Assembly (NCBI RefSeq): GCF_031769215.1
Contig: NW_026782464.1
Location: 124,001 to 188,000 of the forward strand
DNA from: Ylistrum balloti
Lineage: Eukaryota
Direction: 5' to 3'
DNA: 64,000 nt
Each line of letters opens with the position of its first letter. Position 1 is the stretch's first letter. The notes under the pieces were generated by a model. It searched no databases. It was not told the DNA's origin and saw only the letters and a program-made list of their open reading frames with translations. This document shows positions 1-4,591 of this stretch, piece by piece. The translations under genes and the position numbers were made by a program.

Positions 1-419
1 AAACTTTCAAATTCTTCTCATTGACCAAAACTTTCACTATCAATGATGTGAAATGTTGTTGTATTTGTGAAAAGCATTGAATATATGGTGAGCAATACAG
101 AGCCAATGGGCCTTTTGTTATTTTTATACTCTATATACAAATTAGACCTTATCCTAGTTTTTAAAGCATGAAACACTAATTGTTGTGTACAGTCCTTTTT
201 TCTTACTTTAAAGAATATCAGGTTTATTTTAGTTACCATACAGTTAAATCTATGCCAATGAATGTTTTGGTAAAAACATTCACAAACCTGGTATTCAGCC
301 TGTGTCCATTTTCTCACTACAACATAACTTATTAAATTTATTACATGAAGTGTTTTTGAATCAGTGTGAGAAATGAAAGAGAGAACAAAAAGTACAAATA
401 AAGGTTACATGTAAGTCAG

Positions 420-1135: not shown

Positions 1136-2549
1136 GAATTGTTTATGGACCATGGATGTTGGGCAATTAGAATAACCCACCATCTGATGATGGTGGTCTA
1201 ATAACGAAGGATACTGAATCCTTCTTTGCTGGAACTCCGCACTTAAAGTGTATATACTCTCCTAAACTGTATATTCTGGGCAGTTTTGAAGTTTTATAGC
1301 CCAGCACCATCATGAAGATTAAAGGCTATAAGATAAAGGTGTTGACAATTAAATACTACATGTATGTCTGCAGGACTTCAGTGGTTAGTTGGCTGTTAAG
1401 GTAATACAACACAATAGCGAAGCAAAGTGAAACAAATTTGATGTTTTAGTAAGTTGGTACCTGCAGACCAAAGAAAATAATAAAATATGAATGGCATGTT
1501 AATTTAACAGTATTTTCTCTTTGTTTGATGAAAAACTTCCTATAGAAAACAAAGAGAATATTTTCTATAGGTAATGTCCCTGCTATTTCAGTCTGTTGCA
1601 TCCCATTCCTAATTAATGTCATATCTTGAGAGCCTCTCAGAAGTTTTGGATCATATTTACTCCAAAGTGTCATAACATCATATCAAGCTCTGCACCTCAT
1701 TATGTAAAGGTGGTCATCTATCAAGGTTACAAGGTCAAAGTTCATTACTTATGTAAATTCATTACACAATCATAGCTTATATGCAAGAGAGCATGGTCAT
1801 TATTCATGACTTTTTCTAGTTCAGTTCATTAATGGAAATGAATTATATAGGTTGGTGATGACAAAGTCCAGGATCAGTGTCTTCAGTCTGGACACAGGCA
1901 TGAGTCGTCCAATTTACAATAGACATAAACAGGTGTCTTACAGAATCAAACACAGAAAAATGTACATTACTAGACTGTTTCTGTCCTGCACTACTATACT
2001 TATCTGTTACCAGGGCTGTTTGTAAAGTATCATTTACGGTCACAGAAAAAATGTTCTTCAAAAACTGTTGCCTTGAAATGACTGCATCAAACCATTAATC
2101 GCTGTGTTGTAAGATTGACTACTATCTCTGAAGGTTTTGATTAATACCCAGCAACATCTGTCTACTAATTTATCTCCATGTGACGTGAAGATTAGGGCAG
2201 AATCAGATGTGTCTATACAATCAGAATGATCTTTTTTTTTTGATGAATTAAATATTCGAAAGACAGATGTCAAGATTTTTGAACAAGAGTGAGTTTAATA
2301 CCTATCATTTTCCATGTTATACTTACTCATTTCTAAATGACCAACTTTCTATCTGTATTTCAAATCTATAATATCCACTTCTTTTCTCATCCATCTTTAT
2401 GACAATGCAGTGTTAGAAAATTGAAACTCAAATACAGAGTGGTATAACATTTATTATAACAAATATATGAAAATAATATTTAAAAGATTTCATGATTATT
2501 TCTTCAAAAATATCACAAGAAAGACCAATGGCTTCATCACCTGTTGCTG

Positions 2550-4591
2550 TTAATGGCACGTTTTTCCAAAAAATGGAAGTTTAGCACAAGGGTTTTCTGG
2601 GGCTACTGTTGTGTCTGTTAAACCTTTTAACACAATTGTAATATTTCTATCCTTGGCCATCTCGGTCAAAGTTTCTACTCCTTCTGCCGACACCTTGTGG
2701 TCATATATATCCAAGTGTTCAAGTTTCGGACAATTCTTCACTAGACTTATTATTGCACTTTCTGATATAGTTTTTATCCAAGAAAGGTTAAGTTCCTTCA
2801 AGTTTTTAGCTGAACGCCATAAAGCACTCATAGATCGGTCTGTTAAATGTTTGCAGGCACACAAGTTTAAAGATTCCAAATGGGGAAGTTTCTGTAACGA
2901 AACAGAGAGAAATACTGAATTTACTTTCATTTTACATAATCAAATTATGGCATATTGTATAAAACAACATTTGCTTTGTGTCTCAAGCAATTTCAGATAC
3001 TAACACATTTATTGGCAGTTAACATGTGCCTTGTAAATAAGCCCATCAATATAACCTAAGTTTCAGTAGAGATACAGACAAATGATATGTCATTGTTGTT
3101 CTGTACTAAGCTCACTTCCATACTTTGAGCAAAACATATGCATGCTTCTTTTGAGGTGTCTTTGCTTTGATGTTCAATACTGAATTTTTTGAAAGTCCAT
3201 ACAATTTTGCAGAATATATTTAAACTAATGTTTTCATTAAGATTTATTGTTGATGATCAGCATTCTGAATTCAGTAACCAAATACTGAAAAATATCTATT
3301 TGTAACATTATCATCAACAACATAACAAATATGTTTACCTTAGCAAGTTGTTCCATTAAATTATCTGTCATTAAGTATCCACAATCTTTGAGGCTGAGAA
3401 TGCGGAGATGTGGACACGACTTCCAGACACTTCTTAGTGTTCCTTCGGTGAGGTAAATATTATCCAGATTAAGATGATGTAAAGTTGGAACAAGCAGCTG
3501 ACGAAATGCTGCATTGTTTAATTTCTTTTTTTTCTTCAGTCTATGGATCATGTTACTGTTAAAAAGTAAAAACAGCCTCATAAGCATACTCACTCTGTAA
3601 TCTTATAACAATCAGATTCAATTTCAATGATTTTAAGCCAACCCTCTGTGATAATAGCTTTATCTGGATAAATGGTACTAGTTTAATTTATCAACAGATA
3701 ACAATGTTGAATTACTTTTAATATTTGATTGTTGACTTCTGTACGACTACACTATACTATGTTTAAGAAATTGCCAGTTATATACTTACTTTATTAAATA
3801 CTCATCTGGGAAGTCTTCCAGGTCAAATAACTCCAGGTTATCCGACACATAGTCTAAACATGTGGACAGAAGTGTTGTAACATTGGTACCACTGTGACAT
3901 GGGTTCTACAATACAACAAGTGATGGTAATTGTCAATATCTGTACAACTAGACTTACTATAAATATTAATTTCAGTTATTCAAATATCTTTTTGCATAAA
4001 TCAATAATAGTTCTAATCATTTTCCAATATACTTACCACTTCGAAGTTTACACAGAAGCAAGCTCTGACCAAGGTTTTGCCGTTTTCCTCTTTGCGTTCA
4101 AATCGCTTGGCTCCTCTAGTGGAGAGGGACGAGTCCACTTCTGCCAGTATTTCTTCCCTGGTATCATGCCTCATCAGATTCAGTTCCACCACCTGGTCCA
4201 TGTCTACATATCCTACAAAATACACCACATTTTGGTAGAGATCATACATGTATTTGCTGGCAGCCTGATCATAACCATCACGTTAATCCAAATTTACATC
4301 CTGGTGAGCGATTTCCATATAATATCGCTTGGTCTGTGTCTCGAAAAATATACCCCTGATTTGAACACTGATTTAATGGGTGAAAATACATCTGTAAAAC
4401 CGATTCTGAATAAGAATACATATAACATACATTTAGATTGCTAAACGATACAAACCTCCCTCGTACACGTCCAGACCCTCTTTCACAGCGCCGTACCGAA
4501 GGAGGTAACACAGCCGCTTTGCCAAACGAGTATCTTCATTATCTTCAGAATTCATCTTTTTTTGCTTGCCAGTTTTTGTTGAACTCGACAT
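2550..4591 (-). CDS. 328-aa protein: degenerate Tpt1/KptA (2'-phosphotransferase) N-terminal lobe + BC-box-like motif + AMN1-like leucine-rich repeats; 5 coding exons
   Basis: Exons on the minus strand: 4591-4456, 4212-4037, 3905-3790, 3555-3339, 2891-2550. All introns are GT-AG with compatible phases (1,0,2,0) and the total is 987 nt. The N-terminus TRLAKRLCYLLRYGAVKEGLDVYEGGYVDMDQVV...AKRFERKEENGKTLVRAC matches TRPT1 SKALSYALRHGA..GL....DGFV....KQRF....LIRANQGHS. It is followed by TLLSTCLDYV (BC-box consensus) and LRRs such as LHHLNLDN, CPHLRILSLKDC, LPHLESLNLCAC and CPKLEHLDIYD. An AG acceptor directly precedes the ATG, so a 5' UTR intron is likely. Confidence 0.85.

What the first reader, a model, noticed from the sequence alone, without database searches (positions are those of the whole stretch)
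2550..4591. Fusion of a catalytically degenerate Tpt1 RNA-binding lobe with a BC-box/LRR, a possible Cullin substrate receptor
Seen in sequence: exons 1-2 encode the Tpt1/KptA N-lobe motifs (LRYG for LRHG, KRF, VRA for IRANQGHS). The C-terminal NAD+-binding lobe is absent and is replaced by TLLSTCLDYV..LEDFPDEYLI and AMN1-like LRRs. Established: Tpt1 catalysis needs an Arg-His-Arg-Arg tetrad and the NAD+ lobe; [STP]LxxxCxxx[VI] is the Elongin BC box, and ZYG11/ZER1/PRAME-type BC-box repeat proteins are CRL2 receptors. Inference: a non-catalytic sensor of 2'-phosphate or terminal-phosphate RNA coupled to ubiquitination. I do not know this architecture as a characterised protein.
Basis: partly seen in the sequence, partly recalled or inferred. 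Interest (0 to 1): 0.75.

Follow-up and report, generated by a model that had tools for sequence, protein, structure and literature searches.

The report
Dead Tpt1 RNA-lobe fused to LRR
This scallop gene encodes half of an RNA-repair enzyme (the RNA-binding half of Tpt1, without its catalytic half) joined to a leucine-rich-repeat module of the kind that ubiquitin ligases use to pick targets. The protein family is conserved across many marine invertebrate phyla, and I found no paper that describes it.

Summary
A five-exon minus-strand gene (4591..2550, all GT-AG) encodes 328 aa, identical to XP_060079141.1 of the scallop Ylistrum balloti. A transcript contig from a related scallop ends its matching blocks on or within three bases of the predicted exon borders, so the Tpt1-like exons are spliced to the LRR exons.

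Residues 19-96 match Pfam PTS_2-RNA above threshold, but only the RNA lobe (profile 2-77 of 177). The model superposes on human and mouse TRPT1 (Z 13.3, 1.9 A). The NAD+ lobe is absent. Both phosphate-clamping arginines are kept (49/49 and 48/49 members) and the tetrad His is Tyr (48/49).

The C-terminal part is an FBXL/SKP2/Rad7/AMN1-type LRR.

The BC-box reading is plausible, not shown:
- The motif is met strictly in 22/49 members and is common by chance.
- The strict Cul2-box pattern is met in 0/49.
- No F-box, SOCS-box or VHL family matched the box in Pfam.
[quoted passage not shown] That is weak (Z 5.3) but in register with its EloC-contact residues.

Orthologues occur in molluscs, annelids, nemerteans, brachiopods, rotifers, echinoderms, hemichordates and amphioxus. 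UniProt auto-names some '2'-phosphotransferase', probably wrongly. Verdict: real, conserved, uncharacterised; ligase coupling untested.

The parts
4456..4591 (-). Exon 1: start codon, disordered Lys-rich N-terminus (res 1-20) and helix 1 of the Tpt1-like RNA lobe, with LRYG (R32 at 4498-4496, Y33 at 4495-4493)
   Evidence: model; only Tpt1 chains hit in the PDB; pLDDT below 50 for residues 1-20; transcript block 4593-4452.
4037..4212 (-). Exon 2: rest of the winged-helix RNA lobe, with KRF (R82 at 4105-4103) and VRA (R95). The Tpt1 similarity ends at the exon end
   Evidence: ESM Atlas top three PTS_2-RNA; PF01885, residues 19-96; Z 13.3 to TRPT1; block 4214-4037.
3790..3905 (-). Exon 3: near-invariant linker NPxH (P106 in 42/49, H108 in 48/49), BC-box-like helix T115-V124 (3875-3846) and the FPDEY motif (3812-3798)
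   Evidence: conservation. (ZYG11B VHL box is the top structural neighbour). (block 3906-3790).
3339..3555 (-). Exon 4: second and third helices of the box (139-151, 157-163) and LRR 1-2
   Evidence: secondary structure; LRR hits; block starts at 3555, so the alternative in-frame acceptor at 3594 is not used in the related transcript.
2550..2891 (-). Exon 5: LRR 3-6, C-terminal tail (E314-H328, 2597-2553) and stop codon
   Evidence: LRR_6 29.8 bits, LRR_4 28.3 bits; FBXL2 6e-31; block 2893-2550; tail conservation.
2450..2455 (-). AATAAA about 95 nt downstream of the stop: candidate polyadenylation signal
   Evidence: Read directly. Inferred, not tested.

Best explanation
The gene encodes a non-enzymatic three-part protein.

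1. Residues about 20-104 are the winged-helix RNA lobe of the RNA 2'-phosphotransferase Tpt1/TRPT1. The two arginines that clamp the 2'-phosphate and the lysine that stacks on the flipped base are kept. The tetrad His is Tyr, and the whole NAD+ (ADP-ribosyltransferase) lobe is missing.
2. Residues about 111-165 form a three-helix box that resembles a VHL box (BC box plus cullin box).
3. Residues about 166-305 are six cysteine-containing LRRs of the FBXL/SKP2/Rad7/AMN1 type.

It most likely works as a reader rather than an enzyme. The Tpt1-derived lobe would bind a phosphomonoester-bearing nucleotide: a 2'-PO4 RNA, or a small ligand such as 2',5'-ADP, NADP or CoA, which real Tpt1 RNA lobes also hold. 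The box would dock the protein on Elongin B/C and a cullin, and the LRRs would hold a protein target for ubiquitylation.

Shown: the gene model, the splicing (in a relative), the domain identities, the loss of the catalytic lobe and the conservation across phyla.
Inferred: ligand binding (about 0.5), Elongin BC docking (about 0.45) and ubiquitin-ligase function (about 0.45).
For: Gene and splicing.

Tpt1 RNA lobe:
- PF01885 38.2 bits (cut-off 26), profile positions 2-77 of 177 only. Orthologues score 33.7-45.3 bits.
- A family profile of the N-terminal part hits only Tpt1 chains in the PDB: yeast 4e-10, mouse and human 3e-8.
- VIA-align Z 13.3, rmsd 1.9 A over 84 residues to mouse and human TRPT1.

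Ligand-contact residues, mapped from the HMMER alignment to an archaeal Tpt1 and the contact lists in PMC6333775 and PMC10622864: R32 49/49, R82 48/49, K25 46/49, position 98 Phe or Tyr, Y33 48/49.

LRR type: FBXL2 6e-31, FBXL17, SKP2, Rad7 and KDM2B; SKP2 Z 18.1 and Rad7-Elc1 Z 17.3; AMN1 and FBXL clusters in the Atlas.

Box: the top hit among 48,161 chains is the ZYG11B-Elongin BC complex, model 12..106 on ZYG11B 13..121. CRL2-APPBP2 is third. That register places L116/C120/L121/V124/F131/F136/P137 on ZYG11B L18/C22/L23/L26/F33/F50/P51, residues named as EloC contacts in PMC13201589. These positions are conserved in 49 members.

In F-box proteins the box aligns after the F-box, not on it.

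Selection: the architecture is kept in eight phyla.
Against: - No experiment of any kind exists.
- The structural match to ZYG11B is weak (Z 5.3). The tool's own note says Z under 8 may reflect only a common arrangement.
- Foldseek found nothing significant for the box (best E 0.095).
- No F-box, SOCS-box or VHL Pfam family matched the box, and the PDB sequence hits were at chance level or absent.
- The strict BC consensus holds in 22/49 members: position 1 is Arg or Lys in 21, and Cys is Thr or Gly in 6. The strict Cul2-box pattern holds in 0/49. The BC regex is frequent in unrelated LRR proteins.
- The conserved hydrophobic residues of the box could simply be the core of an LRR cap.
- The conserved arginines of the RNA lobe could be structural. 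The Lys60 equivalent is not conserved and His-to-Tyr alters the 3'-phosphate contact.
- No RNA data from this species.
Confidence: 0.5

Rival explanations
1. An RNA- or nucleotide-binding LRR adaptor that has nothing to do with ubiquitylation. The three-helix box would be just the N-terminal cap of the LRR solenoid, as it may be in AMN1. The protein would bridge an RNA or nucleotide ligand to a protein partner, comparable in layout to the RNA-binding domain plus LRR of NXF1/TAP.
For: The box matches no F-box, SOCS-box or VHL family. The strict Cul2-box pattern is absent and the BC regex is common by chance. The ZYG11B match is only Z 5.3. There are weak sub-threshold hits to LRR_NXF1-5. An AMN1 model covers residues 111-321 at TM 0.51/0.61, and my searches found no paper linking AMN1 to Elongin BC.
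Against: The closest solved relatives of this LRR type (FBXL2, FBXL17, SKP2, Rad7 with Elc1, KDM2B) are cullin-RING ligase receptors or were solved bound to an Elongin C homologue. The in-register identity with seven ZYG11B EloC-contact residues is hard to get from a generic cap.
Confidence: 0.3
2. An SCF-type receptor. The box would be a diverged F-box that binds SKP1 rather than Elongin C. NCBI names for orthologues point this way ('F-box/LRR-repeat protein 2-like', 'F-box protein SKP2B', 'FBXL13-like').
For: The LRRs are most similar to FBXL2, FBXL17 and SKP2. FPDEYLINNMIHRL resembles the LPxE-hydrophobic start of an F-box helix 1 (read from the sequence).
Against: No Pfam F-box or F-box-like match in the box of any of 19 members or in whole proteins, apart from one noise hit inside the LRRs. 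In the structural search, FBXL2, FBXL3, FBXL5, COI1 and TIR1 align the box to the region after their F-box. Only two helices follow the FP motif before the first LRR strand.
Confidence: 0.1
3. The protein is still an RNA 2'-phosphotransferase, as the UniProt automatic names say.
For: PF01885 is matched above the gathering score. UniRef names several orthologues '2'-phosphotransferase'.
Against: Only profile positions 2-77 of 177 are matched. The NAD+ lobe, which carries the fourth tetrad arginine and all NAD+ contacts, is absent. The tetrad His is Tyr in 48/49 members and the GHS motif is gone. Tpt1 activity needs the tetrad and NAD+ (PMC6333775 and PMC10622864).
Confidence: 0.02
4. A gene-model artefact: two neighbouring genes (a Tpt1 fragment and an LRR gene) wrongly joined.
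For: No RNA reads of this species could be laid.
Against: A 1014-nt transcript contig from a related scallop carries one uninterrupted 330-aa ORF, colinear with all five exons. Many 1.0-1.9 kb Logan contigs encode full-length orthologues. The same fusion is found in eight phyla.
Confidence: 0.02

Closest known systems
Tpt1/KptA/TRPT1 RNA 2'-phosphotransferase (Pfam PF01885)
   Same: The N-terminal winged-helix RNA lobe: same fold (Z 13.3, 1.9 A) and detectable sequence homology. The two 2'-phosphate-clamping arginines and the base-stacking lysine are retained. The family profile scores eukaryotic Tpt1 chains higher than archaeal and bacterial ones.
   Different: The NAD+/ADP-ribosyltransferase lobe and the fourth tetrad Arg are absent. 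The tetrad His is Tyr and the GHS motif is lost. The lobe is fused to an LRR module, so it cannot catalyse the Tpt1 reaction.
ZYG11B/ZER1-type CRL2 receptors (N-terminal VHL box followed by LRRs)
   Same: An N-terminal helix with Leu-x3-Cys-Leu-x2-hydrophobic, an aromatic residue seven positions later, and then a Phe-Pro motif leading into LRRs. ZYG11B in its Elongin BC complex is the best structural neighbour of the box model, in register with its EloC-contact residues.
   Different: There is no ARM domain and the BC-to-cullin-box loop is shorter. Position 1 of the BC box is often Arg or Lys, and the last hydrophobic residue of the Cul2 box is polar in register. An extra domain sits N-terminal to the box. 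No sequence-level hit was found and the structural score is weak.
FBXL proteins, SKP2 and yeast Rad7 (cysteine-containing LRR receptors of cullin-RING ligases)
   Same: The LRR subtype (FBXL2 E 6e-31; SKP2 Z 18.1; Rad7-Elc1 Z 17.3). The general layout is a docking box followed by LRRs. KDM2A/B-type members also carry additional domains N-terminal to the box.
   Different: No F-box is detectable. There are fewer repeats (about six).
AMN1 homologue
   Same: Overall size and shape of the box-plus-LRR part (Atlas TM 0.51/0.61 over residues 111-321). NCBI names the Pacific oyster orthologue 'protein AMN1 homolog isoform X3'.
   Different: AMN1 has no Tpt1-like domain. My searches found no paper linking animal AMN1 to Elongin BC, so the name adds no mechanism.
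Fission yeast Tpt1-Yae1 fusion (PMC12810181)
   Same: A natural fusion of Tpt1 to an unrelated domain.
   Different: There the complete, active two-lobe enzyme is fused. Here only the RNA lobe survives.

Membership tests
Tpt1/KptA (PF01885) | N-terminal winged-helix RNA lobe | tested here: met
   PF01885 38.2 bits against cut-off 26, residues 19-96. Z 13.3, rmsd 1.9 A over 84 residues to TRPT1.
Tpt1/KptA (PF01885) | C-terminal NAD+-binding (ADP-ribosyltransferase-fold) lobe | tested here: not met
   The match covers profile positions 2-77 of 177 only. Residues from 105 on are the box and LRRs.
Tpt1/KptA (PF01885) | [quoted passage not shown] | tested here: not met
   R32 and R82 are kept. His is Tyr in 48/49 members. 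The fourth Arg lies in the missing lobe.
VHL-box / BC-box receptors of Elongin BC-cullin ligases | BC box (S,T,P)Lxxx(C,S,A)xxx-hydrophobic (PMC4878042) | tested here: inconclusive
   The scallop matches. The strict pattern holds in 22/49 members, with Leu in 48/49 and Cys in 36/49. The regex is common in unrelated LRR proteins: 15 hits in 10,621 residues.
VHL-box / BC-box receptors of Elongin BC-cullin ligases | Cul2 box hydrophobic-PxX-hydrophobic-xxx-hydrophobic | tested here: not met
   0/49 in register 136-144, because the last position is polar. Phe-Pro and the +3 aromatic residue are conserved.
VHL-box / BC-box receptors of Elongin BC-cullin ligases | Three-helix box superposable on a solved VHL/SOCS box bound to Elongin C | tested here: inconclusive
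   The ZYG11B-EloBC complex is the top hit among 48,161 chains, but at Z 5.3, rmsd 3.1 A over 92 residues. APPBP2 scores Z 4.5. The best Foldseek E-value is 0.095.
VHL-box / BC-box receptors of Elongin BC-cullin ligases | Physical binding to Elongin B/C and Cul2 or Cul5 | not testable with these tools
F-box/LRR (FBXL) proteins | F-box domain that binds SKP1 | tested here: not met
   No F-box Pfam hit in the box of 19 members. The box aligns after the F-box of FBXL2/3/5, COI1 and TIR1.
F-box/LRR (FBXL) proteins | Cysteine-containing LRRs | tested here: met
   FBXL2 6e-31, FBXL17 2e-24, SKP2 6e-20. Z 16-18.
AMN1 homologues | Box-plus-LRR protein of about 260 aa without other domains | tested here: not met
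   The shape of residues 111-321 resembles an AMN1 model (TM 0.51/0.61), but this protein carries an extra Tpt1-derived domain. No sequence-level orthology test was run.

The most novel reading that the evidence does not exclude
The family is an Elongin BC-cullin substrate receptor whose activity or targeting is gated by a Tpt1-derived reader domain. That domain would recognise RNA 2'-phosphate (or terminal phosphate) marks, or 2'-phospho-nucleotides such as NADP(H) and CoA. This would couple RNA-repair or RNA-splicing intermediates, or redox-cofactor state, directly to protein ubiquitylation in marine invertebrates. It would be the first case of the Tpt1 RNA lobe reused as a stand-alone reader module.
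Probability: 0.3. Interest if true: 0.8.

Novelty: new variant of a known kind. Interest (0 to 1): 0.62.

Why it matters
- Tpt1 is a long-standing puzzle in animals. The enzyme is conserved although the main animal tRNA ligase pathway leaves no 2'-phosphate (background knowledge, not tested here). A second, non-catalytic use of its RNA lobe, kept under selection in at least eight animal phyla, points to something phosphate-marked that these animals need to read rather than remove.
- If the box binds Elongin BC, this would be a ubiquitin-ligase receptor with a built-in nucleotide or RNA-mark sensor. That design is known for DNA (CXXC in KDM2/FBXL19) and iron (hemerythrin in FBXL5, both from background knowledge) but not for RNA 2'-phosphate.
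- Practically, the UniProt automatic name '2'-phosphotransferase' for these proteins is very probably wrong.
- The isolated lobe could serve as a natural, catalysis-free affinity reagent for 2'-phosphorylated RNA.

Tried and rejected
- RNA evidence in the same species. The run search found one run of unknown kind, not on record as RNA, and nothing could be laid on the gene. I used a cross-species transcript contig instead.
- Exon pieces alone gave only marginal Tpt1 hits: exon 1 E 0.038 in Pfam and nothing in the PDB for exon 2. This was resolved once full-length orthologues were found.
- The exhaustive protein search with exon 2 found 21 relatives but no canonical Tpt1. So I could not test whether these animals also keep a normal TRPT1, nor root the N-lobe within Tpt1.
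- Sequence tests of the box led nowhere. A family profile of residues 105-168 gave only chance-level PDB hits; Rad7 appeared at E 2.2, aligned to the N-terminal end of the crystallised chain. A 26-residue profile gave nothing. A Pfam scan of 19 box sequences matched no F-box, SOCS-box or VHL family.
- Foldseek on the box model gave no significant match.
- An alternative in-frame acceptor at 3594 (13 extra residues) was rejected. The RefSeq protein and the related transcript both use 3555.
- Literature searches for a Tpt1-LRR fusion and for AMN1 with Elongin or cullins found nothing relevant.
- The paper on the Rad7-Elc1 structure is not in the library, so Rad7's box residues were not compared.
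- No other copy of the gene lies in the window.
Full report
**1. What is in the sequence**

The minus strand between 4591 and 2550 carries five exons: 4591-4456, 4212-4037, 3905-3790, 3555-3339 and 2891-2550. All introns have canonical GT-AG borders. The reading frame is continuous over 987 nt and encodes 328 aa.

The translation is 100% identical over all 328 residues to P0023 = XP_060079141.1, 'uncharacterized protein LOC132558572 [Ylistrum balloti]'.

**2. Are the exons really joined?**

No RNA run of this species was on offer. The single run found is of unknown kind and not on record as RNA, and nothing could be laid on the gene.

P0048, an orthologue with 83-88% amino-acid identity, lies on a 1014-nt Logan contig (L001, SRR19746227) as one uninterrupted 330-aa ORF. 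BLASTN of that contig against the window gives five colinear blocks:

| Block in window | Predicted exon |
|---|---|
| 4593-4452 | 4591-4456 |
| 4214-4037 | 4212-4037 |
| 3906-3790 | 3905-3790 |
| 3555-3349 | 3555-3339 |
| 2893-2550 | 2891-2550 |

The blocks end on or within three bases of the predicted borders, except that the exon 4 block stops 10 bases short of its 3' end. So in a related scallop the Tpt1-like exons are spliced to the LRR exons, using the acceptor at 3555 and not the alternative in-frame one at 3594. Dozens of further 1.0-1.9 kb Logan contigs encode full-length orthologues of oysters and other bivalves. The 'two genes wrongly fused' reading is out.

**3. The N-terminal domain**

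Each of the first two exons points to Tpt1 on its own:
- Exon 1 alone hits only three PDB sequences at E up to 10. All three are eukaryotic tRNA 2'-phosphotransferases.
- Exon 2 alone has PTS_2-RNA clusters as its three nearest ESM Atlas neighbours.

Other evidence agrees:
- The full protein matches Pfam PF01885 at 38.2 bits (gathering score 26), with residues 19-96 on profile positions 2-77 of 177. Orthologues score 33.7-45.3 bits over the same part of the profile.
- A profile of 12 N-terminal regions finds only Tpt1 chains in the PDB: yeast 4e-10, mouse and human 3e-8, then archaeal and bacterial enzymes.
- An AlphaFold2 model built on ten family members (mean pLDDT 82.7, pTM 0.74) superposes on mouse and human TRPT1 at Z 13.3, rmsd 1.9 A over 84 residues.

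This is the RNA lobe. Banerjee et al. (PMC6333775) describe it as a winged helix that carries three of the four tetrad residues. The NAD+ lobe carries the fourth.

**4. Catalytic state**

The Pfam match stops where the NAD+ lobe should begin. The next residues, encoded from exon 3 on, belong to the LRR module, and the intron between exons 2 and 3 is only 131 nt. The lobe is therefore absent, not hidden.

I mapped contact residues using the HMMER alignment to an archaeal Tpt1 and the contact lists of PMC6333775 and PMC10622864. Counts are over 49 family members.

| Tpt1 residue and role | Family position | Conservation |
|---|---|---|
| First tetrad Arg (bidentate on the 2'-phosphate, also contacts the 3'-phosphate) | R32 | 49/49 |
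| Second tetrad Arg (2'-phosphate and base stacking) | R82 | 48/49 |
| Lys that sandwiches the flipped base | K25 | 46/49 |
| Tyr that hydrogen-bonds the phosphate | position 98 | Phe 25, Tyr 24 |
| Tetrad His (contacts only the junction 3'-phosphate) | Y33 | Tyr 48/49 (His kept only in Dimorphilus) |
| PhoTpt1 Lys60 | position 80 | variable; a basic residue follows at 81 in 39/49 |
| GHS motif | 99-101 | lost |

The protein cannot run the Tpt1 reaction. Most of the pocket that holds a 2'-phospho-nucleotide has been kept under selection. The same pocket in real Tpt1 also holds 2',5'-ADP, NADP+ and the pAp end of CoA, so a small-molecule ligand is as possible as an RNA one.

**5. The C-terminal part**

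Residues about 166-305 are six strand-helix repeats.
- The family profile's best PDB hits are FBXL2 (6e-31), FBXL17 (2e-24), SKP2 (6e-20), yeast Rad7 (2e-17) and KDM2B (2e-14).
- Structure agrees: SKP2 Z 18.1, and Rad7 in its Elc1 complex Z 17.3 at rmsd 2.6 A over 167 residues.
- In the ESM Atlas the nearest clusters are the family's own, then FBXL4/7/15/20, SKP2 and AMN1. The AMN1 model covers residues 111-321.

The closest solved relatives of this LRR subtype are cullin-RING ligase receptors or were solved bound to an Elongin C homologue.

**6. The box between the two domains (residues 111-165)**

It forms three helices: 116-126, 139-151 and 157-163.

The sequence-motif evidence is weak:
- The review consensus is (S,T,P)Lxxx(C,S,A)xxx-hydrophobic for the BC box and hydrophobic-Pxx-hydrophobic-xxx-hydrophobic for the Cul2 box (PMC4878042).
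- The scallop meets the first pattern. Only 22 of 49 members do so strictly, and none meets the second in register.
- The BC pattern occurs 15 times in 23 unrelated LRR proteins.
- Pfam scans of 19 box sequences matched no F-box, SOCS-box or VHL family.
- PDB profile searches gave chance-level hits only.
- Foldseek on a separate box model (residues 100-205, pLDDT 84.9) gave nothing significant.

The exhaustive VIA-align search of 48,161 chains with that model gave one more telling result:
- The only hit with Z of 5 or more is human ZYG11B in complex with Elongin B/C (9bid_A): Z 5.3, rmsd 3.1 A, 92 residues, model 12..106 on ZYG11B 13..121.
- CRL2-APPBP2 is third (Z 4.5, chain 8..91). The second ZYG11B entry scores Z 4.0 (chain 10..119).
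- F-box proteins in the list (FBXL5, COI1, FBXL3, FBXL2, TIR1) align the box to the stretch after their F-box.

The start of the range fixes the register: family residue r falls on ZYG11B residue r-98. This register comes from the ranges only; I had no residue-level alignment output. It puts L116, C120, L121, V124 and F131 on ZYG11B L18, C22, L23, L26 and F33. After ZYG11B's longer loop, F136 and P137 fall on F50 and P51.

The ZYG11B structure paper lists exactly these residues as the EloC interface. L18 inserts into the EloC pocket, and the L18S and F50A/P51A-containing mutants lose activity. The paper also notes that ZYG11B's loop is unusually long compared with other VHL boxes (PMC13201589).

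Family conservation at these positions is high: L116 48/49, C120 36/49, position 124 Val or Ile 48/49, position 131 aromatic 49/49, F136 43/49, P137 44/49.

This supports the BC-box idea, but not strongly. Z 5.3 is below what the tool regards as meaningful on its own, and a conserved hydrophobic cap would look similar. I put Elongin C binding at roughly even odds, and SKP1 binding at about 0.1.

**7. Distribution**

Word-based and profile searches recover about 55 proteins with the same PF01885-plus-LRR architecture:
- Bivalves: Pecten, Pinctada, Ostrea, Magallana, Saccostrea, Mercenaria, Ruditapes, Mya, Mactra, Sinanodonta.
- Gastropods: Haliotis, Elysia, Bulinus, Lottia and others.
- A chiton: Liolophura.
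- Annelids: Capitella, Dimorphilus.
- A nemertean: Lineus.
- A brachiopod: Lingula.
- Rotifers: Rotaria.
- Echinoderms of four classes.
- A hemichordate: Saccoglossus.
- Amphioxus.

None from vertebrates, arthropods, nematodes or cnidarians appeared. That absence rests on a word-seeded search and is not proof. Source names are inconsistent: 'uncharacterized', 'AMN1 homolog', 'FBXL2-like', 'SKP2B', and in UniProt '2'-phosphotransferase'. I found no paper on the fusion.

**8. Verdict**

The Tpt1-lobe, loss-of-catalysis and LRR parts of the interpretation are supported. The Elongin BC/cullin part is a reasonable hypothesis, still untested, and now rests on one weak but specific structural argument.

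The most likely working model is a non-catalytic reader of a phosphorylated nucleotide or RNA mark, joined to a ligase-receptor-type LRR. It is a new domain architecture made of known parts, conserved across bilaterian phyla, and worth a bench test.

Noticed in passing
window 2553-2597 (-), residues 314-328: The tail after the last LRR carries a motif ENP[CS]xxLPNFGK[VT]W. It is conserved in most of the bivalve members, a chiton and one of the two abalone sequences. It is absent in echinoderms and amphioxus and replaced by long acidic tails in heterobranch gastropods. In the scallops it ends FFGKTCH or FFGKKYH. Its function is unknown; it could be a partner-binding motif or a C-terminal degron.
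   Followed up: partly
window 4037-4042 and 3894-3905 (-), residues 103-108: The junction between the Tpt1 lobe and the box is among the best conserved parts of the protein: E103 49/49, P106 42/49, H108 48/49. It lies exactly where Tpt1's inter-lobe hinge would be (alignment). This suggests a fixed inter-domain interface or a functional His.
   Followed up: no
P0094 (Dimorphilus gyrociliatus), aligned to residue 33: This is the only one of 49 family members that keeps His at the tetrad position. All the others have Tyr.
   Followed up: no
P0018 (Branchiostoma floridae x B. japonicum, 487 aa): This model repeats the segment from the second box helix through LRR1 four times in tandem, compared with the 315-aa B. 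floridae protein P0016. It is either a real tandem exon duplication or an assembly or annotation artefact.
   Followed up: no
P0008 (658 aa, hit): This is a highly repetitive protein built from one short unit read in several frames. It matched the exon 2 query in five stretches. It looks like a translated tandem repeat and a chance hit, not a relative.
   Followed up: no
window 3556-3594 (-): An alternative in-frame acceptor (ttacag) 39 nt upstream of exon 4 would add 13 hydrophobic residues. Neither the RefSeq protein nor the related scallop transcript uses it.
   Followed up: yes
UniRef names of P0022, P0016, P0014, P0019, P0028, P0081, P0087 and others: UniProt's automatic name '2'-phosphotransferase' is applied to proteins that lack the NAD+ lobe and the tetrad His. 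This is a probable systematic misannotation.
   Followed up: partly
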